The notes below the pieces were generated by a model, which was given only the letters and a program-made list of their open reading frames with translations, was not told the DNA's origin and did no database searches. From assembly GCA_964019335.1 (NCBI GenBank), contig OZ025672.1, positions 248,001 through 312,000 on the forward strand: DNA of 64,000 nucleotides, given 5' to 3'. The translations under genes were made by a program, and so were the position numbers. Position 1 is the first letter of the stretch. Every line of letters starts with the position of its first letter. The DNA is from Diplonema japonicum (taxonomy: Eukaryota; Protista; Euglenozoa: Diplonemea). Shown here one piece after another: positions 12,576 to 29,586 of the stretch.

Positions 12576-13457
12576 TCAGAGAGGGAAGCTGACCCCTGTC
12601 TCCTTCTCACTGAGGGACCAAAACCTCTCCCTGATACAGAAGTCCTTCGCGGCGTAGGGAGGGCCTGCAAGGCAAGGGCTGCCGAAACTCCAAAAGTAAG
12701 GCCCGTAGTAGTCACCAGACTTGACGGAAGAACCTGTTGCTGCAAGGATCTGGGGCCTAGCTCCCTGTGAAACCTTCATCGCAAGCAGTGGGTTTATGTA
12801 ACGGAAGATTGAATTGCGCTGCAGCTCAGTTGCCGTGTACCCAGGGTGGGCCGCAACAGCAATGATGTTGGTCCCCTCAAGCCTCTTCGCAAGCTCGTAG
12901 TGGAACACAAGGTTTGCAAACTTGCTGTGCCCGTATGCCTCCTGCGTGTTGAAACTCTTGTCGCAGTGGATGTCGTCGAAGTCGATCCACCCGCCGCCAG
13001 GCAGGAACCGCAACGCCATCATGCTGCTCACTGTCACCACCCTCGGCTTATCGGCCGCCCTCAAGGAAGGCAGCAGGTGCATTGTCAGAGCAAAGTGTCC
13101 AAAGTGGTTCGTCCCCATCTGCATGTCGAACCCCTGCTTCGTCTTCACCCTCTCCGTGAACATCACACCAGCATTGTTCATGAGGCAGTCAATTTTCGCA
13201 TGATCTTTTTTAATGTTATCAGCAAACTCTTTCACACTGTCAAGGTCTGCAAGGTCCAACCTCACGAACTCCACACCCCCCTTCCCGTTTGTCTCTTTTT
13301 TAACCTTCTCTATCGCGGCCATTGCTCTTTCCTGGCTGCGGCACCCCATCACAACATGTCCGCCTGCGAGCATTATTTGCTTCATCGACTCGTACCCGAG
13401 GCCCGAGTTGGCACCTGTGATCACAAAGGTCTTGCCTGTCTGGTCCGTGATGTCCAT
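12576..13457 (-). CDS. Short-chain dehydrogenase/reductase (retinol-DH/WWOX-like), tandem copy 1
   Basis: TGANSGLG, NNAG, NHFGHF, YGHSK (YxxxK), HPG motifs. Confidence 0.95.
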   Translation of the reverse strand: MDITDQTGKTFVITGANSGLGYESMKQIMLAGGHVVMGCRSQERAMAAIEKVKKETNGKGGVEFVRLDLADLDSVKEFADNIKKDHAKIDCLMNNAGVMFTERVKTKQGFDMQMGTNHFGHFALTMHLLPSLRAADKPRVVTVSSMMALRFLPGGGWIDFDDIHCDKSFNTQEAYGHSKFANLVFHYELAKRLEGTNIIAVAAHPGYTATELQRNSIFRYINPLLAMKVSQGARPQILAATGSSVKSGDYYGPYFWSFGSPCLAGPPYAAKDFCIRERFWSLSEKETGVSFPL

Positions 13458-13682
13458 TTTGCTGTTGTTGCGTGTTGACCTGTATACTTGATCTGTAAAG
13501 CACGGAGTTTGAAGGCTGTGTCTTTGTGGAGTGGTTCAGCCCTTTAGTTGAGCAGAACAGAAAAGAAAATACATCCCGTTTCAAACCGAGGCCAGTCTCT
13601 TCTCCGATTTGTATAATGGGCTGACCCGTTCTTTTCTTTTCTTTTCTTTTCTTTTCTTGAAATTCAACCCTGGAGGGTGAAT

Positions 13683-13768
13683 GGGCATTTCTACAGTAAA
13701 TGTCATACAGAAAACCGAAAATTAACTATTTCCAGCACTAGTTTGTGACATTTATCGTAGAAATGCCC
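13683..13768. mobile_element. 86-bp miniature inverted-repeat element with AT flanks
   Basis: gggcatttctac.. taaatgtca ... tgacattta ..gtagaaatgccc, flanked by AT at 13681-82 and 13769-70. Confidence 0.7.
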
Positions 13769-13811
13769 ATATACTTTTTTTTTCATTTCTTTTCTTTTAC
13801 AACGTTGTGGA

Positions 13812-13938
13812 GTGTCCCATACTCTCAAGAGAAGGGATCACAGCCCATTCTGTCGGCTCACAGCTCCTGTACAAGTGGTGCTTGTGTTCGTGTATCAACG
13901 TCTTCATCCCATCCGCAAGCCCGCTCACCTCCATGTTC
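13812..13938 (-). pseudogene. 127-bp captured fragment of the SPX-kinase gene (exon 2 plus putative splice donor)
   Basis: About 90% identical by eye to 26396-26522, same orientation. Confidence 0.9.
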
Positions 13939-13976
13939 TTTAGTATACGTTCTTTCAACCCCTAAAACCTTTTTTA

Positions 13977-14858
13977 TCAGAGAGGGAAGCTGACCCCTGT
14001 CTCCTTCTCACTGAGGGCCCACAACCTCTCCCTGATCACAGGGTCCTTTGAAGCGTAAGGAGGGCCTGCAAGGGAAGGGCTGCCGAAACTCATCCAGTAA
14101 GGCCCGTAGTAGTCACCAGACTTGACGGAAGAACCTGTTGCTGCAAGGATCTGGGGCCTAGCTCCTTGCGGGGCCTTCATGGCAAACACTGGGTTCATGT
14201 AACGGAAGATTGAATTGCGCTGCAGCTCAGTTGCCGTGTACCCAGGGTGGGCCGCAACAGCAATGATGTTGGTCCCCTCAAGCCTCTTCGCAAGCTCGTA
14301 GTGGAACACAAGGTTTGCAAACTTGCTGTGCCCGTACTGCGTGTATGTGTTGAAACTCTTGTCGCAGTGGATGTCGTCGAAGTTGATCCACCCGCCGCCA
14401 GGCAGGAACCGCAACGCCATAATACTGCTCACTGTCACCACCCTCGGCTTATCGGCCGCCCTCAAGGAAGGCAGCAGGTGCATTGTCAGAGCAAAGTGTC
14501 CGAAGTGGTTCGTCCCCATCTGCATGTCGAACCCCTGCTTCGTCTTCACCCTTTCTGTGAAACATACACCAGCATTGTTCATGAGGCAGTCAATTTTCGC
14601 ATGATTCTTTTTAATGTTATCAGCAAACTCTTTCACACTGTCAAGGTCTGCAAGGTCCAACTTCACGAACTCCACACCCCCCTTCCCGTTTGTCTCTTTT
14701 TTAACCTTCTCTATCGCGGCCACTGCTCTTTCCTGGCTGCGGCACCCCATCACAACATGTCCGCCTGCGAGCATTATTTGCTTCATCGACTCGTACCCGA
14801 GGCCCGAGTTGGCACCTGTGATCACAAAGGTCTTCCCGCTCTGGTTGCCGATGTCCAT
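13977..14858 (-). CDS. SDR tandem copy 2
   Basis: Near-identical to copy 1, same motifs. Confidence 0.95.
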   Translation of the reverse strand: MDIGNQSGKTFVITGANSGLGYESMKQIMLAGGHVVMGCRSQERAVAAIEKVKKETNGKGGVEFVKLDLADLDSVKEFADNIKKNHAKIDCLMNNAGVCFTERVKTKQGFDMQMGTNHFGHFALTMHLLPSLRAADKPRVVTVSSIMALRFLPGGGWINFDDIHCDKSFNTYTQYGHSKFANLVFHYELAKRLEGTNIIAVAAHPGYTATELQRNSIFRYMNPVFAMKAPQGARPQILAATGSSVKSGDYYGPYWMSFGSPSLAGPPYASKDPVIRERLWALSEKETGVSFPL

Positions 14859-15141
14859 TGTGTTGTTCGGTAAATATCTGAGAAAGTTGCTTGATAAAGC
14901 ACATGAGAACAGTCAAAAATAACAATAACAGAGATAGAGAGTAACCAAAAAGAGAGGAAGGAAGGTGGGAGCAATGCTCTCCTGTTTTATCACTTTGTTC
15001 AGGCAGACTCCTTAATATGGAGGATCTGCCTTTAAGATAGGGAACCAGAGGAATGGGTTCTCTCGGGTAAATGCACGTTCTGTAACAGAACGATTTGTTT
15101 CTAAGCGTTCAGCTCACAATAGTTCTTGTGAGGTGTTTGTC

Positions 15142-16008
15142 TCAAAGCGGGAACATTACTCCTGTCTCCTTTTCGCTGAGGGCCCACAGTTTGCCCCTGA
15201 TGACAGGGTCAAGGGCAGCTTTTGGAGGGCTTGCAAGATGGGGATTTCCGAAGCTCAACCACCGCGGCCCGTAGTACTCCCCGGACGTGACGGAAGAACC
15301 TGTTGCTGCAGTTAGCTGAGATTTTGCTCCTTGCGGGCCACTCATGGCTAAGACGTTTAAGAAACGGGCGAAGGAGTTGCGCTGCAGCTCAGTTGCCGTG
15401 TACCCAGGGTGGGCCGCAACAGCAATGATGTTGGTCCCCTCAAGCCTCTTCGCAAGCTCGTAGTGGAACACAAGGTTTGCAAACTTGCTGTGCCCGTACG
15501 CAACATACGTGTTGAACCTCTTGTCGCAGTGGATGTCGTCGAAGTCGATCCACCCGCCGCCAGGCATGATTCGCAACGCCATCATGCTGCTCACTGTCAC
15601 CACCCTCGGCTTATCGGCCGCCCTCAAGGAAGGCAGCAGGTGCATTGTCAGAGCAAAGTGTCCAAAGTGGTTCGTCCCCATCTGCATGTCGAACCCCTGC
15701 TTCGTCTTCACCCTCTCCGTGAACATCACACCAGCATTATTCATGAGGCAGTCTAGTTTCGCATGCTTCCTTTTTACATTCTCAGCAAACTCTTTCACAC
15801 TGTCAAGGTCTGCAAGGTCCAACTTCACGAACTCCACACTCCCCTTCCCGCTGGTTGCTTTTTTAACCTTCTCTATCGCGGCCATTGCTCTTTCCTGGCT
15901 GCGGCACCCCATCACAACATGTCCGCCTGCGAGCATGATCTGCCTCATCGACTCGTACCCGAGGCCTGAGTTGGCACCTGTGATCACAAAGGTCTTGGCA
16001 ACGTTCAT
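15142..16008 (-). CDS. SDR tandem copy 3
   Basis: Same motifs; more diverged C-terminus. Confidence 0.95.
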   Translation of the reverse strand: MNVAKTFVITGANSGLGYESMRQIMLAGGHVVMGCRSQERAMAAIEKVKKATSGKGSVEFVKLDLADLDSVKEFAENVKRKHAKLDCLMNNAGVMFTERVKTKQGFDMQMGTNHFGHFALTMHLLPSLRAADKPRVVTVSSMMALRIMPGGGWIDFDDIHCDKRFNTYVAYGHSKFANLVFHYELAKRLEGTNIIAVAAHPGYTATELQRNSFARFLNVLAMSGPQGAKSQLTAATGSSVTSGEYYGPRWLSFGNPHLASPPKAALDPVIRGKLWALSEKETGVMFPL

Positions 16009-25334: not shown

Positions 25335-25534
25335 NNNNNNNNNNNNNNNNNNNNNNNNNNNNNNNNNNNNNNNNNNNNNNNNNNNNNNNNNNNNNNNNNN
25401 NNNNNNNNNNNNNNNNNNNNNNNNNNNNNNNNNNNNNNNNNNNNNNNNNNNNNNNNNNNNNNNNNNNNNNNNNNNNNNNNNNNNNNNNNNNNNNNNNNNN
25501 NNNNNNNNNNNNNNNNNNNNNNNNNNNNNNNNNN
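25335..25534. other. Assembly gap (200 N)
   Basis: N-run; truncates the kinase 3' end. Confidence 1.
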
Positions 25535-26610
25535 CAGCATGCAAGGATGAGCTCCAGCTGCTGCTGTTGATCCTGTCCGGGGAAGAGAGGGACGCCTGTG
25601 AGGAGCTCAGCAAGGATGCAGCCGACGCTCCACATGTCGGAGGCTGTGGTGGTCTTCCGAGAGCAGAGGAGGACCTCTGGTGCCCTGTACCACTGGGTCT
25701 GGATGTAGTCTGGGTTGTCGTTGGTGGTGGTCTCTGTCCCGCCGGAGAGGGTGCGGGCGAGCCCGAAGTCCGACAGGTAGCAGCGCGGGGTGTCGTCCAC
25801 CAGGATGTTGCTGAGCTTCAGGTCCCCTGTGAACGACGCCCCGCTCGTGGATGTAGGCGAGGGCGCTGAGGAGCTGCAGCATGAACCATTTCTTGTGCTG
25901 CGCGAGGAGCTGCCGCCGTACGAGGAGGTCCTCGCACGTGTGCGGGATGAAGGGCATGATGAGGTGCACGTCCTTGTTGTTCCCGTTCACGATCACGTCG
26001 TTCAGCTCCACGATGTTCGGGTGCCGCAGCTGCTGCAGGATCTGGATCTCCCGGTAGGTGCGCTGCCCGAGGATCGGGTGCGACCACGTGTCGTGGATCG
26101 TCTTCACCGCCACAATCGCTCCCGTGTCCCGCTGCGTTGCCCGGCACACCACCCCGTACGCCCCCCGCCCGATCACAGGCCCCAGGCGGTACTCCCGCGT
26201 CAGCTTCGGTTCGTCGATCTTCGGTGGCTCCTCCCCTCCCTGCCACAGCATGGATGACAGGGATGGTGCTTTCCGTCGGGATTGGGATCCTGTGTTATTG
26301 TTGTTGTTGTTGTTATTGTTGTTGTTGTTGTTGTTGTTGCTGTTGTTGTGAGAGATAAAGAGAGAGAGTTGTGTTTGTTGGGGTAGGGGGGGAGGGTGTC
26401 CCATACTCTCAAGAGAAGGAATCACAGCCCATTCTGTCGGGTCACAGCTCCTGTACAAGTGGTGCTTGTGTTCTTGCATCAACGTCTTCATCCCCTTCGC
26501 AAGCTCGTTCACCTCCATGTTCCTCTCCACCAGGATTGTTTCGCTCTCACTCGGAAGCGTCTCCACACACGCCCCGAACTCTGCCTCGATGGACGCCTGT
26601 TGTTGGTATT

Positions 26611-26649
<39 letters not shown>

Positions 26650-27157
26650 TTTTTTATATATTCCACCACACCTTTGCACGCTGAGCATGTGCAAGCCCTG
26701 CGCTCAAGAAGAGCCACTTCGACGGGTCGACCACATAGGGGTTGGAAGGGACGTTCTTGTTGTACTTCTTCACAATCTTCGAGACCGCGATGGTGTTCAA
26801 GTACATGAACCACAGCACGAGGATCACGTCGTCGTACACGTTCGACAGCTGGATCAGAACGATCCCGTGCTCCTGCGCCTCCTTGTAGCCACGCACCTGC
26901 CGCGCAGCCACCAGCGCCTTCCGCACACGTTGAAGCACCTTGAGCTTCTGTTTTACAATACTGTTGACTGAGGTCATCTCCTCCTCTAGCTTTTTGATAA
27001 AGGCCCCCTGGTCGATCTCAGGGCCGTTGCTGTTCTCACTGCTGTTGCTTGATTTCACCGCGTTCAGCACCTTCTTCAGCAGCCGATAGTTCAAGGAGTT
27101 ATCGGCCACGCCATGCTGGGCGCTTACATCATGTAGGAACTTTCCAAAGCCCACCAT
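25535..27157 (-). CDS. SPX domain-MAPK (ERK7/8, MAPK15-like) fusion; spliced, 3' end lost in the gap, one extra G at 25824-25827
   Basis: SPX: MVGFGKFL, NYRLLKKVL, LNTIAVSKIVKKYNK. Phase-0 intron 26597-26671 joins AQRAK|ASIEAEFGACVETLP in frame. Kinase: GRGAYGVV, VAVK, QRTYRE, HR(D)LKLSNIL, DFGLAR, WYRAPEVLL, DMWSVGCI. Confidence 0.82.
26290..26406 (-). other. Probable 117-nt in-frame intron containing an (AAC)n microsatellite
   Basis: GTATGG...ACACAG; length is a multiple of 3 with no stop, so retention would encode poly-Asn. Confidence 0.55.
26597..26671 (-). other. 75-nt GT-AG poly(A) intron joining the SPX and kinase exons
   Basis: AAG|GTGTGG...(A)n CAATACCAACAACAG|GCG; removes the stop that ends the SPX ORF. 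Confidence 0.8.
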
Positions 27158-27874
27158 GGCCAACCCCTTTGTTTGATTTGTACACGAAAGAAAGGGGGGG
27201 AAATCTACAACAAAACGCGTGCAAAAGAACAATAAAATAAATATAAGTGAGGCGGTAAGCTGCCTGTTAAGCTAGCTAACATTGAAGTTCAACAGAAAGA
27301 AACAAGAAAAGGGAGTGTTACTCGTGTGTGTTGGTGGGTGCGGAAGCCACATGAGAAGAAGGGGAAAGGGGGCTTAATCGCTTTGCAGGCCTGCTTTCCT
27401 TAATGGAGATACGTGGAGGGAGGGGCATCCAACCCCTTCCCCTTTTGGAACATTTATAGGAAGAAAAAGGAAAGGAAGAAAAACACCTCCCTTATCTCCT
27501 GCTACGTTTATGTGTTTTTTTTTTTTTTTTTTTTTTTCTTAAACTACGAATTTGTGCCGAGAAACAAGGATCGCTTTCAATTTACTTACCACGTATATAT
27601 ATTTTTGACTCCCGTTTACCCTTCCTTCCGTCGTTTTCCTTTTCTTTTCCCCCCGTTTTGACTTTGTTTTTTTTTTTAATTTATTTCTTTTTCCAACTGC
27701 GGCCGCGTACGGGTTGTGGGAGCATTTATCTTTTTTTTTACCCCCTCTTTTTTCTCCTTCTTCTTTCCCAATCCCTTTACGCGGCCCTTTAAACGAAAAA
27801 AAAAAAAAAAACGAAGGAACAAAATTTGAAGGAAAAAAAAAAACTTTAAAACGAGGGAATGGGCAAATATATTT

Positions 27875-27982: not shown

Positions 27983-29586
27983 TCACACTTCACTCCTCTC
28001 TTCCTTCTCTCTTTCCTCGACCATAAGCTGGTTGTTCTTCATCACATAAGCCTCACAATCCAAATCATAAGCGCGGGGCTGGATCTTGACAACAGTACAG
28101 GGCGCCAAGTGCGTGGGAGCACATTCACCAAGATAGCTGTGAAGGGCTGTCATCACCTAAAAAAGAAAAAAAGTTTTTTCCCCCCCTTCTAAAATACCGT
28201 TCCATGCCCACAGATCATAAGATGCGTTGGGCACCTTTCAATTTCAAAGATAATGGGCTCCAGCCTTTCAATGATATCCTCGTAAGTCTCCCCTTGCTCC
28301 GCAACCGAAAACCCACACTGGTCAAGATACCGCCATGAAACATGAGGGTACCCCGCCTTCTGCAGCTGGGTTACAGTATCAGCATCGGCAGAATCGTTCG
28401 CCGACCAGATAGTAACTTCTTCTTTATTGGGGACCTGTGCTTCAAGGAGGCTGAGAAGAGCTTGGGCAAATCCTTCCGTGCCAGATCTGGCTGCCGACAT
28501 ATTTTTCTGTGAGATTTTTCGAAGACGTGCGGAAGAGGAGTCTAGAGGTGTTTTCCCGCGTTCCATGGAACCTTCTAAGGCGTCTTGCGGGGAGGGGTCG
28601 GACGATGTTCTCGTGATGTCGTTCAGAAAATCGGATTCGGGTTTGGACGCTTCGTCCGGTTCTTTTGAAGAGGTTCCCTCCGTAACACACAGGTACACGT
28701 GTCGGTGCATCACCTTTAAGTTCATTAGTAAGAAGGTCAGCTTCCCTGTTAAATACCCATTCGTCCTATGCATTTTCATCTTGTTGCGATAGCATTTTAT
28801 AAATGGGACGCCTTCGCTGTTGCTTAGTGTCTCGTAAGCTGACGCGTAGTAAGATATGCGTCTTTCAAAATCTGAGTTGGCTTTGGTGGGGTCGATGCCG
28901 ATATATTCGGGCATGAGCAGAATTTCTTTTTGAGAAACAGAGTCGGATGCCCCTCCCATGATATCGCACATCTCGATGAACATTATCCGGTCCTTAGGAA
29001 CGACTTGTAACAGCTTTTCTATGATGAGAGCTCTTCGATCGATGGAGTGGTTTGTTCCATCGAAAATGGCAACTTGTCCTTTATCGTTCGTGACCCAACT
29101 TACCAGATCTTCAAGAGCTTGCTCAAACACTTCTAACAATTTCGTTTTGTTCTCCGTGTTGTGGTGATTGAAGAATTCCGCATCGGGGAACCCAAGGTTC
29201 TTCCTACGATATATCGCTATGTTGAAGACCTGGGTTTTAACGCCCAGCCACGCTAAGTATCTCATTATCCTCCGTGATATGTATGTTTTGCCTCTTGCGG
29301 GTAGGCCCATCAGCACGATGACCAAAGGTTGTGTGTCGCGCTGCCTTATCGTCAAGGGTTGCTTTTGCATGTGTTTGCTGAGCCGCAGGGCTTGATCAGC
29401 ATCGTTTTGCTTCCTCTCAACAGCCTCCTCCTCTGTCATGGCGTGGTCCAAGGTGTAGTTTAAAGGGTGGGGTTCCAGATTGTACGGCTGTTTTTTTTCT
29501 TTTTTTTTTTTTCTTTTTTTGTTGTCGTATATACATCGCTTGCCGTCATTGCTATCGGGCTGTTCCCTGAGGAGGCGTCGTTCCAT
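27983..29586 (-). CDS. 6-phosphofructo-2-kinase with degenerate fructose-2,6-bisphosphatase domain (5' exon structure uncertain)
   Basis: LMGLPARGKT P-loop, FNIAIYRR, AIFDGTN, ETYEDIIERLEPIIFEIER. Intron 28157-28197 adds VMTALHSYL..CTVVKIQPRAY, ending at stop 27983. Confidence 0.9.
28157..28197 (-). other. 41-nt GT-AG intron
   Basis: ACG|GTATTT...TTTTAG|GTG restores the PFKFB-like C-terminus. Confidence 0.88.

What the first reader, a model, noticed from the sequence alone, without database searches (positions are those of the whole stretch)
25535..27157. Hidden SPX-MAPK fusion: candidate inositol-pyrophosphate/phosphate-gated kinase
Seen: three ORF-track pieces become one gene after removing a phase-0 75-nt GT-AG intron (26597-26671) and one extra G in a G-run. 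The kinase piece has no convincing start of its own (the track starts it at GTG). The SPX domain keeps the ligand-binding basic surface (NYRLLKK; SKIVKKYNK). Known: SPX domains sense InsP/PP-InsP and are usually fused to EXS, MFS or CitMHS transporters, RING, VTC or ANK-GDPD; I do not recall a characterised SPX-MAPK. Inference: a one-component phosphate-sensing kinase that shortcuts the MAPK cascade.
Basis: partly seen in the sequence, partly recalled or inferred. Interest (0 to 1): 0.88.

Follow-up and report, generated by a model that had tools for sequence, protein, structure and literature searches.

The report
Phosphate-sensor domain fused to MAP kinase
This is a real, expressed gene of the marine protist Diplonema japonicum that joins an SPX domain, the usual cellular sensor of inositol pyrophosphates (phosphate status), to a MAP-kinase-like enzyme with a lipid-anchor signal; all sampled diplonemids have this design and no paper in the searched library describes it.

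Summary
On the minus strand, the SPX ORF and the kinase ORF lie in one frame. An RNA contig and public D. japonicum transcript ORFs (100% identical to the exons) join AHAQRAK|ASIEAEF. The "extra G" is an assembly error: contigs of four runs from three studies lack one base of CCCC 25824-25827.

- A second intron (26406..26290, 117 nt) holds the poly-Asn run.
- The 200-N gap hides about 267 C-terminal residues.
- A second gene copy probably exists, with the same core but different N- and C-termini, and is missing from the assembly.

The N-terminus folds as SPX (all top PDB matches are SPX structures) and keeps an invariant Y24 and KxxKKxxK. The kinase is catalytically intact and closest to ERK7/MAPK15-type MAPKs. 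Its activation loop reads PDY instead of TxY in every homologue. All complete homologues also end in a CaaX box, and most carry an IQ-like helix.

Orthologues exist in about ten diplonemid species and none were found elsewhere. Databases label them MAPK15, ERK2 or Hog1, and no paper found describes the fusion. Gating of the kinase by inositol pyrophosphates is plausible but untested.

The parts
26672..27157 (-). Exon 1: start codon (MVGFGKF...) and residues 1-162, covering SPX helices a1-a4 and the start of a5, including Y24, K28 and K127/K130/K131/K134.
   Evidence: 100% identical to D. japonicum transcript ORF P0015 residues 1-162. Pfam SPX 30.5 bits. AF2 plus Foldseek: all top hits are SPX structures.
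26597..26671 (-). Intron 1: 75 nt, phase 0, GTGTGG...poly(A)...AACAG. It contains the in-frame TAA.
   Evidence: RNA contig X6 record 12 joins 26595/6 to 26671. The transcript ORF reads AQRAK|ASIEAEF. It fits the published D. japonicum intron type: GT-AG, A-rich, CAG at the 3' end (PMC12621601). ORF calls in other diplonemid genomes stop at the same point.
26407..26596 (-). Exon 2: residues 163-225 plus the first base of codon 226. It covers SPX helices a5-a6 and the conserved linker motif HHLxRxxDPTxWAVxPxL.
   Evidence: 100% identical to P0015. Helices 153-174 and 179-204 in the AF2 model. Invariant columns in the alignment.
26290..26406 (-). Intron 2: 117 nt, phase 1, GTATGG...(AAC)n...CACAG. 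It has no stop codon, so it reads as a false poly-Asn insert.
   Evidence: The transcript ORF reads PSLE-R-SQSRRK in place of 40 genomic codons. RNA contig X6 record 10 joins 26287/9 to 26406.
25535..26289 (-). Exon 3 (partial): residues 226-477, from the kinase N-lobe to subdomain IX/X (GRGAYG, K288, E306, HRDLK, DFG, PDY, APE). It is cut by the gap.
   Evidence: Pfam Pkinase. 100% identical to P0015. All best PDB matches are MAPKs.
25824..25827 (.). CCCC run (GGGG on the coding strand) with one spurious base, which causes the apparent frameshift in HRD.
   Evidence: One letter is 'left out' at 25824 in the contigs of X1, X9, X3 and X6, which come from three studies. The transcript ORF is in frame.
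25335..25534 (.). 200-N scaffold gap. It hides the rest of the gene (residues 477-743: kinase C-lobe end, IQ-like helix, CaaX) and probably a second copy.
   Evidence: One search shows the N run. No match to residues above 477 in the window or in the assembly. Contigs of all four runs end at 25535.
13811..13938 (-). Dispersed copy of about 128 nt (94% identical) of the end of exon 2 plus the first 11 nt of intron 2. It sits just after the stop codon of a short-chain dehydrogenase gene.
   Evidence: tblastn, sequence, alignment. It explains X6 record 11 and the G>C at 26441.

Best explanation
SHOWN. Window 27157..25535 (minus strand) is the 5' two-thirds of a single expressed D. japonicum gene. 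It has three exons and two short A-rich GT-AG introns. The full product (718-792 aa in the public transcript ORFs) has this order:
- an N-terminal SPX domain;
- a conserved linker;
- a catalytically intact MAPK-family kinase, closest to ERK7/MAPK15, with PDY in place of TxY;
- an IQ-like basic helix;
- a C-terminal CaaX box.
The stop codon between the ORFs is intronic. The frameshift is an assembly error. The 3' end lies in a scaffold gap.

INFERRED.
- The SPX basic surface (Y24, K28, K127, K130, K131, K134) binds InsP6 or PP-InsPs. Ligand occupancy then changes kinase output by relieving or imposing an intramolecular or dimeric SPX-kinase contact. Cellular phosphate or energy status would thus be turned directly into protein phosphorylation.
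- The threonine of TxY is lost in every homologue, so activation probably relies on tyrosine autophosphorylation, as in ERK7/8, rather than on a MAP2K.
- The CaaX box places the kinase on a membrane.
- A second copy with an identical core but different SPX N-terminus and C-tail probably lies in or beside the gap.
For: Gene structure:
- Both ORFs are in the same frame.
- The transcript ORFs P0014/P0015 (EukProt EP01064 Diplonema japonicum) are 100% identical to all three exonic pieces and skip both introns and the extra base.
- RNA contigs of run X6 carry both junctions, and four runs lack the extra base.
- The introns match the published D. japonicum intron type (PMC12621601).

Conservation:
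- SPX plus Pkinase in one ORF occurs in Rhynchopus humris, R. euleeides, Lacrimia, Sulcionema, Hemistasia, Namystynia, D. ambulator, D. papillatum (two proteins) and unnamed ENA genomes.

SPX identity:
- Pfam PF03105 scores 30.5 bits on exon 1.
- phmmer against PDB gives SPX entries for 6 of 9 hits, with KxxKKxxK aligned.
- The exon 1 AF2 model has pLDDT 79.6. Almost all of its listed Foldseek matches, and every one down to rank 34, are SPX structures; the best is 5ijj at TMq 0.79.
- Y24, K127, K130, K131 and K134 are invariant.
- K129 of Vtc4 (= K127 here) belongs to the ligand pocket (PMC10167327).

Kinase:
- The best 60 PDB sequence hits and all of the Foldseek matches listed are MAPKs, including TgERK7 6v6a.
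- K288, E306, HRDLK, DFG and APE are invariant.
- PDY or PEY in all 21 sequences scored by the pattern search.

Other features:
- CaaX is present in all complete sequences but one (the ENA gene model P0012), and an IQ-like helix in most.
- IPK-family inositol phosphate kinases are present in the genome.
Against: - No binding or activity data exist for any member.
- Pfam scores the SPX domain below its gathering cut-off in the full-length proteins (20.8 bits for P0015), so the domain is divergent.
- The window itself lacks the C-terminal third. CaaX and the IQ-like helix are known only from transcript ORFs, whose four 'isoforms' are probably mixtures of two copies.
- Pfam does not recognise the IQ motif.
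- ERK7 affinity rests on best hits and a KEGG label, not on a tree.
- SPX domains in other proteins act by partner binding or oligomerisation rather than direct gating, so the exact mode is open.
Confidence: 0.68

Rival explanations
1. The fusion is real, but the SPX domain does not gate catalysis. It works as a ligand-dependent adaptor or oligomerisation module. It would recruit the kinase to another SPX-binding partner or to substrates, as plant SPX1 binds PHR or Vtc SPX domains pair with each other, or it would make the kinase itself a target of PP-InsP-dependent sequestration.
For: Known SPX proteins often act through protein-protein contacts that PP-InsPs make or break (PMC10167327; rice SPX1-PHR2 structure 7e40 among the fold matches). 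A 40-residue disordered linker separates SPX and kinase in the AF2 model. This allows independent movement and gives no confident docking.
Against: Part of the linker is strongly conserved (H208, D214, W218, A219 and P222 invariant). This suggests an intramolecular or fixed interface rather than a free tether. No partner is known.
Confidence: 0.22
2. The A and B N-termini and the C1 and C2 C-termini seen in the transcript ORFs are alternative exons of a single gene, not two paralogous genes with a homogenised core.
For: The same A/B pattern around an identical body is seen in D. ambulator. No B-type or C-terminal sequence was found anywhere in the assembly, so a second locus has not been seen directly.
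Against: - The A N-terminus is contiguous with the core inside exon 1, with no intron at the divergence point.
- No B exon lies within the 37 kb upstream in the window.
- Contigs of runs that retain the introns (taken as DNA) all break at 26950 and at 25535, the two divergence points, as expected for two genomic copies.
- D. papillatum and an unnamed ENA genome each have two full-length diverged paralogues on one contig.
Confidence: 0.15
3. There are two separate genes (a stand-alone SPX protein and a kinase made by spliced-leader addition at the 26597 acceptor), or a pseudogene broken by a stop and a frameshift.
For: In the raw window there is an in-frame TAA and a +1 frameshift. ORF callers on other diplonemid genomes output separate SPX and kinase pieces.
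Against: - A spliced RNA contig and complete Trinity ORFs join the parts.
- The frameshift is absent from four read sets.
- Fused ORFs occur in transcriptomes of at least eight other species.
- Catalytic and ligand-surface residues are invariant.
Confidence: 0.02

Closest known systems
SPX-domain sensor proteins (Vtc4, XPR1/Syg1, Pho81, Pho87/90/91, plant SPX1-4, SPX-EXS/MFS/RING, CtGde1)
   Same: Same fold: helical hairpin plus two long helices plus a5/a6, with Foldseek TMq up to 0.79 to 5ijj. Same N-terminal position in the protein. Same basic ligand surface (Y..LKK in a2, KxxKKxxK in a4).
   Different: The output domain is a protein kinase, which is not among the described SPX partners. The sequence is divergent and sits at or below the Pfam threshold in full-length proteins. 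The a2-a3 loop is variable, with a 49-residue insertion in the B form.
ERK7/ERK8 (MAPK15) atypical MAP kinases, e.g. Toxoplasma ERK7 (PDB 6v6a)
   Same: Best PDB sequence hit (E 2.6e-54) and among the best structural hits. KEGG label K19603 on two orthologues. Long regulatory C-terminal extension. From general knowledge, ERK7/8 autoactivate without a dedicated MAP2K.
   Different: PDY instead of TEY, so no threonine to phosphorylate. It has an N-terminal SPX domain, an IQ-like helix and a CaaX box. Orthology was not tested by a tree, and identity is only about 35-40%.
Yeast Pho81-Pho80-Pho85 module (SPX protein controlling a CMGC kinase in response to PP-InsPs)
   Same: Same logic: an SPX receptor coupled to a CMGC-group kinase so that phosphate status sets kinase output (PMC10511240 title and abstract).
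   Different: In yeast the SPX protein is a separate CDK inhibitor acting on a cyclin-CDK pair. Here the sensor and the kinase are one polypeptide, and the kinase is a MAPK, not a CDK.
Kinetoplastid SPX-PRPP synthetase TcPRPS4 and other euglenozoan SPX fusions
   Same: A lineage-specific N-terminal SPX fusion to an enzyme in Euglenozoa (bioRxiv 10.1101/2020.01.09.900860). Earlier scan notes list further SPX fusions in this genome (unchecked).
   Different: Different enzyme. The SPX-MAPK was found only in diplonemids, and the SPX proteins that paper names for T. cruzi are Vtc4, Pho91 and PRPS4 only.

Membership tests
SPX domain (PF03105) | Significant match to the family profile | tested here: inconclusive
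   Exon 1 alone scores 30.5 bits against a cut-off of 27.8. Full-length P0015 scores 20.8 bits, below the cut-off. Orthologues range from 8 to 33 bits. phmmer against PDB: 6 of 9 weak hits are SPX entries.
SPX domain (PF03105) | SPX fold: N-terminal helical hairpin, two long core helices, two shorter C-terminal helices | tested here: met
   AF2 helices at 4-14, 24-39, 51-88, 94-135, 153-174 and 179-204. All Foldseek PDB matches down to rank 34 are SPX structures with probability 1.00 and TMq 0.55-0.79.
SPX domain (PF03105) | Conserved basic InsP/PP-InsP-binding surface (Tyr and Lys in a2; KxxKKxxK in a4) | tested here: met
   Y24, K127, K130, K131 and K134 are invariant and K28 mostly conserved in 13-17 sequences. 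The motif aligns with KILKKYDK of rice SPX2 and KIIKKHDK of 5ijp. Vtc4 K129 is a pocket residue (PMC10167327).
SPX domain (PF03105) | Binds inositol polyphosphates or pyrophosphates | not testable with these tools
   Needs ITC or pull-down with recombinant protein.
MAP kinase family (CMGC) | Closest to MAPKs in sequence and structure, with intact catalytic residues | tested here: met
   The best 60 PDB sequence hits are all MAPKs. All of the Foldseek matches listed are MAPKs. Outside diplonemids the best database hits are MAPK15 and other MAPKs. GxGxxG, K288, E306, HRDLK, DFG and APE are invariant.
MAP kinase family (CMGC) | T-x-Y dual-phosphorylation motif in the activation loop | tested here: not met
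   P-D-Y (P-E-Y in Hemistasia) in all 21 sequences with a scorable loop. P418 and Y420 are invariant. It is therefore an atypical MAPK-like kinase, not a canonical MAPK.
MAP kinase family (CMGC) | Activation by an upstream MAP2K | not testable with these tools
   Loss of the Thr argues against classical dual phosphorylation. This is an inference only.
ERK7/8 (MAPK15) subfamily | Orthology to MAPK15 | tested here: inconclusive
   Best PDB hit is TgERK7 6v6a. Many MAPK15 proteins are among the best hits at 33-46% identity. KEGG K19603 labels appear on two orthologues. No phylogeny was made.
CaaX-prenylated proteins | C-terminal Cys-aliphatic-aliphatic-X | tested here: met
   CCVQ/CTVQ in D. japonicum. 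CVVQ, CAIL, CSLQ, CPLM, CSLM, CIIQ, CLVQ, CAVM, CVIL, CAIM, CTVA, CNVM, CSVM, CALM and CTVS in the others. This lies in the gap, not in the window. Actual prenylation was not tested.
IQ calmodulin-binding motif (PF00612) | Match to the IQ profile | tested here: not met
   No PF00612 hit at E <= 5. There is only a conserved IQ-like basic helix, AAxIQRFWRWRxRG.
D. japonicum canonical spliceosomal introns | GT-AG ends, short, A-rich 3' region, CAG acceptor, (G)/GTATG donor | tested here: met
   Intron 1 is AAG|GTGTGG...A-run...AACAG, 75 nt. Intron 2 is A|GTATGG...CACAG, 117 nt. Criteria come from PMC12621601.

The most novel reading that the evidence does not exclude
Diplonemids use a one-polypeptide, membrane-anchored receptor-kinase for intracellular phosphate status. 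PP-InsP binding to the SPX domain directly switches an autoactivating, MAP2K-independent MAPK. Two paralogues would be kept identical in their core by gene conversion, yet differ in the SPX a2-a3 loop and the C-tail, giving two differently tuned or differently located sensors. This would be the first SPX-gated protein kinase and a direct PP-InsP-to-phosphoproteome link.
Probability: 0.35. Interest if true: 0.8.

Novelty: new variant of a known kind. Interest (0 to 1): 0.64.

Why it matters
SPX domains are the general eukaryotic receptors for inositol pyrophosphates. All described outputs are transporters, polyphosphate synthase, ubiquitin ligases, transcription-factor inhibitors or a CDK inhibitor.

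A conserved direct fusion to an active kinase would show that phosphate or energy status can be written straight into protein phosphorylation. It would also give a compact, testable system: one protein, a defined ligand surface and a defined catalytic read-out. This occurs in diplonemids, one of the most abundant groups of marine heterotrophic protists, which live where phosphate is often limiting. D. papillatum, in which both paralogues are annotated, is the model species and a natural organism for the genetic tests.

On the practical side, the case shows three things:
- Public annotations (MAPK15, ERK2, Hog1) miss the SPX domain.
- The chromosome-level assembly has an error and a gap at this locus.
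- Short in-frame A-rich introns can pass for coding low-complexity sequence.

Tried and rejected
- Trypanosomatid origin with a rare cis-intron, or a Blastocrithidia-type reassigned stop codon: dropped. The exons are 100% identical to EukProt D. japonicum ORFs, and other ORFs in the window have no in-frame stops.
- Poly(A) run as a coding poly-Lys tract or a homopolymer artefact: rejected by the spliced RNA contig.
- X6 record 11 and the G>C at 26441 as evidence for the second copy: rejected. They come from the 128-nt dispersed copy at 13.8 kb.
- Depth ratios of Logan contigs as a copy-number test for the core: inconsistent between runs, so not used.
- Search for the missing C-terminus and the B-type N-terminus in the window and the whole assembly: nothing found. 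Only about 60 of about 530 candidates were scored, so absence is not proven.
- Search for SPX-kinase relatives outside diplonemids found diplonemids only. This covered exhaustive phmmer with exon 1, word-indexed searches with R. humris and Hemistasia N-termini, and a kinase-region search with precomputed Pfam columns.
- ESM Atlas gave only SPX clusters at 0.86, a lead only.
- The sigma-70 promoter scan is irrelevant for a eukaryote.
Exons were used by reference, and the public transcript ORF P0015 stood in for the full protein.
Full report
**What is in the window**

The feature lies on the minus strand. An ORF starting at ATG 27157 (MVGFGKFLHDV...) ends at TAA 26656-26654. A second ORF with a protein-kinase domain follows, and a third piece continues the kinase after a frameshift and runs into a block of N. 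Pfam finds SPX (30.5 bits, cut-off 27.8) in the first piece and Pkinase in the other two. Translating 27232..25535 in one frame shows that the SPX and kinase ORFs share a frame. They are separated only by TAA and a poly(A) run that reads as poly-Lys. The N block is 25335-25534 (200 N).

**Organism**

Earlier scan notes named Diplonema japonicum. I checked this independently. The exons are 100% identical to EukProt ORFs EP01064_Diplonema_japonicum_P032644/P032646. A genome note for strain YPF1604 exists (PMC13598402). A 2025 paper describes D. japonicum introns as follows (PMC12621601):
- 98% are GT-AG;
- the median length is 41 nt;
- the donor is (G)/GTATG;
- A is the commonest base in the 3' tract;
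- the acceptor is CAG.

**Gene structure (shown)**

tblastn of the transcript ORFs P0014/P0015 against the window gives perfect identity in three blocks.
- Block 1: residues 1-162 map to 27157-26672.
- Block 2: residues 163-225 map to 26596-26408.
- Block 3: residues 227-476 map to 26286-25537, with a one-base shift between residues 380 and 381.

The first junction reads AHAQRAK|ASIEAEF.

The genomic SLE-SMGHPPPLPQQTQLSLFISHNNSNNNNNNNNNNNNNNNTG-SQSRRK is replaced by SLE-R-SQSRRK. This defines a 117-nt phase-1 intron, 26406..26290 (A|GTATGG...(AAC)n...CACAG|GA). Because it is a multiple of three and has no stop, it passes for a poly-Asn tract.

Logan contigs were laid on 25536-27400.
- Run X6 carries both junctions. 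Record 12 joins 26595 to 26671, and record 10 joins 26287 to 26406. X6 is therefore RNA.
- X1, X3 and X9 run into the intronic repeats, so they are DNA.
- All four runs, from three studies, lack one base at 25824, within the CCCC run 25824-25827.

The frameshift in HRDLK is therefore an error of this assembly. It sits 300 bp from a contig end.

I did not build or search the joined spliced model. Exons were used by reference, and the public ORF P0015 was used as the full protein.

**What the gap hides**

P0015 has 743 residues, and the window ends at residue 477. No match to later residues exists in the window or in the 62.5-Mb assembly. Only about 60 of about 530 candidates were scored, so this is not proof of absence.

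The four Trinity 'isoforms' (718, 743, 767 and 792 aa) combine the following parts:
- Two N-termini. A is the one in this window. B begins MVQFGKFLNKMGEKHGV... and has a 49-residue longer a2-a3 loop.
- Two C-termini, C1 and C2.
- A core that is 100% identical, from NIVKQKLKV to LELILACC.

In all four runs the contigs end at 26950 (with a 30-nt overlap, 26921-26950) and at 25535. These are the two points where the isoforms diverge, and 25535 is also where the assembly contig ends. This is what a de Bruijn graph does at a repeat boundary, so a second genomic copy of the core is the most likely cause.

Supporting observations:
- D. ambulator shows the same A/B pattern.
- Across species, A is closest to A (64%) and B to B (58%), while the core is identical within each species. 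The duplication is therefore older than the species split, and the core evolves in concert.
- D. papillatum has two diverged paralogues on one 160-kb contig, KAJ9451808.1 and KAJ9451800.1. An unnamed ENA genome has two on a 126-kb contig.

Alternative exons of one gene remain possible (about 15%). Against that, A is contiguous with the core inside exon 1, and no B exon lies within 37 kb upstream. Contig depths were inconsistent and were not used.

**A side product**

A 128-nt copy (94% identical) of the end of exon 2 plus 11 nt of intron 2 lies at about 13811-13938 (minus strand). It sits just after the stop codon of a short-chain dehydrogenase gene. It explains X6 record 11 and the G>C at 26441.

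**The family**

An exhaustive phmmer of exon 1 against 1.84 billion representative proteins gave only 11 hits. Six were 725-851 aa long with SPX at the N-terminus. Pfam shows Pkinase in all six and SPX at varying strength.

The sources are diplonemid transcriptomes: Rhynchopus humris, R. euleeides, Lacrimia lanifica, Sulcionema specki, Hemistasia phaeocysticola, Namystynia karyoxenos, D. ambulator and D. japonicum. There are also two D. papillatum GenBank proteins, named 'Extracellular signal-regulated kinase 2' and 'Mitogen-activated protein kinase hog1', and unnamed ENA assemblies. Both diplonemid families, Diplonemidae and Hemistasiidae, are covered.

In the ENA genomes the ORF caller produced separate SPX pieces (176-267 aa) that end just after the AQxAK position, and kinase pieces on the same contigs. 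This suggests that intron 1 is conserved.

Searches with the R. humris and Hemistasia N-termini found diplonemids only. A search with the kinase region found nothing with an SPX domain outside diplonemids.

**SPX identity**

- The AF2 model of exon 1, built with 17 homologues, has pLDDT 79.6. The full-length model places helices at 4-14, 24-39, 51-88, 94-135, 153-174 and 179-204.
- All Foldseek PDB matches down to rank 34 are SPX structures: CtGde1 5ijj (TMq 0.79), Vtc4, XPR1 and rice SPX1, each with probability 1.00.
- In phmmer against PDB, 6 of 9 weak hits are SPX entries. SKIVKKYNK aligns to KILKKYDK and KIIKKHDK.
- In 13-17 homologues Y24, S126, K127, K130, K131 and K134 are invariant, and L27 and N121 nearly so. 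Vtc4 K129, N123 and Y22 are pocket or near-pocket residues (PMC10167327).
- Full-length proteins score below Pfam's cut-off (20.8 bits for P0015). This explains why databases list only the kinase.

**Kinase identity**

- The best 60 PDB sequence hits are all MAPKs, headed by 6v6a, which is Toxoplasma ERK7, and the C. parvum MAPK 3oz6.
- All of the Foldseek matches listed for the full model are MAPKs.
- Outside diplonemids the best database hits are MAPK15/ERK7-8 and other MAPKs at about 33-46% identity.
- Catalytic residues are invariant.
- The activation loop reads DNPDY(V/I)QTQWYRAPE. The Thr of TxY is Pro in every sequence.

By this defining feature the protein is not a canonical MAPK. I call it an atypical, ERK7-like MAPK-family kinase. 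Orthology to MAPK15 was not tested by a tree.

**Further conserved features (only in the part hidden by the gap)**

- A predicted helix at 630-659 carries AAxIQRFWRWRxRG. It is IQ-like, but Pfam's IQ model does not match it.
- A C-terminal CaaX box is present in every complete sequence except one ENA gene model (P0012), with a second invariant Cys a few residues upstream. From general knowledge, X = Q, M, S or A predicts farnesylation and X = L predicts geranylgeranylation. The protein is thus probably membrane-bound.

**Mechanism (inferred)**

The ligand-surface residues and the catalytic residues are all invariant across lineages that share only 40-50% overall identity. Both functions are therefore under selection in one polypeptide.

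The simplest model has three parts:
- InsP6 or PP-InsP occupancy of the SPX surface alters an SPX-linker-kinase or SPX-SPX contact and thereby kinase output.
- Activation uses Tyr420 autophosphorylation rather than a MAP2K.
- The CaaX box fixes the enzyme at a membrane.

The genome has three IPK-family loci and other SPX loci, so the ligand system is present. The main rival is an adaptor or oligomerisation role for SPX without direct gating. None of this has been tested.

**Novelty**

In the held library no paper combines SPX with diplonemids meaningfully, and none describes an SPX-protein-kinase architecture. The T. cruzi work names Vtc4, Pho91 and the SPX-PRPP synthetase PRPS4 as that parasite's SPX-domain proteins.

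The sequences themselves are public but are annotated as plain MAPKs. I therefore rate this a new variant of a known kind: an SPX sensor with a new output domain. It is restricted, as far as these searches reach, to Diplonemea.

Earlier notes of this scan list other SPX fusions in this genome. I did not check them. They suggest that SPX fusions are generally expanded in this lineage, which slightly lowers the surprise of any single one.

**Limits**

- Only one run-laying call was allowed.

Noticed in passing
window 13811-13938 (-): A 128-nt copy, 94% identical, of the end of exon 2 of the SPX-kinase gene plus the first 11 nt of intron 2. It sits directly after the stop codon of a short-chain dehydrogenase gene and is present in RNA contigs. 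It was copied from genomic DNA, not from mRNA.
   Followed up: partly
window 25335-25534 and 25824-25827: The chromosome-level assembly has a 200-N gap exactly where the two gene forms start to differ, and a one-base insertion error 300 bp from that contig end. A whole second SPX-kinase copy (B-type N-terminus, both C-termini) was not found anywhere in the assembly.
   Followed up: partly
window 12576-16008 (-): Three tandem, highly similar short-chain dehydrogenase/reductase genes (12576..13457, 13977..14858, 15142..16008). Pfam adh_short for the middle one.
   Followed up: partly
window 28189-29586 (-): The upstream neighbour encodes a 465-aa protein with a 6-phosphofructo-2-kinase domain (PF01591, 165 bits) and no detected bisphosphatase half.
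   Followed up: partly
P0011 (Rhynchopus euleeides, 1230 aa): A much longer relative with the same PDY kinase, IQ-like helix and CaaX (CTVA). It has a long N-terminal extension and only a weak SPX-like stretch at 388-438.
   Followed up: no
G000 C79:261910-262434, C79:390448-390636, C9:487882-488145, C63:260272-260367; C57:165947-166535, C6:380031-380669, C33:25057-25467: Other SPX-profile matches and three IPK-family (inositol polyphosphate kinase) loci in the same genome. The SPX profile search of the six-frame genome did not flag the SPX-kinase locus itself, which shows how divergent this SPX is.
   Followed up: no
window 26290-26406 (-): An intron whose length is a multiple of three, with no stop codon and an (AAC)n core, reads as a plausible poly-Asn insert. 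Such introns will be invisible to ORF-based reading elsewhere in this genome.
   Followed up: yes
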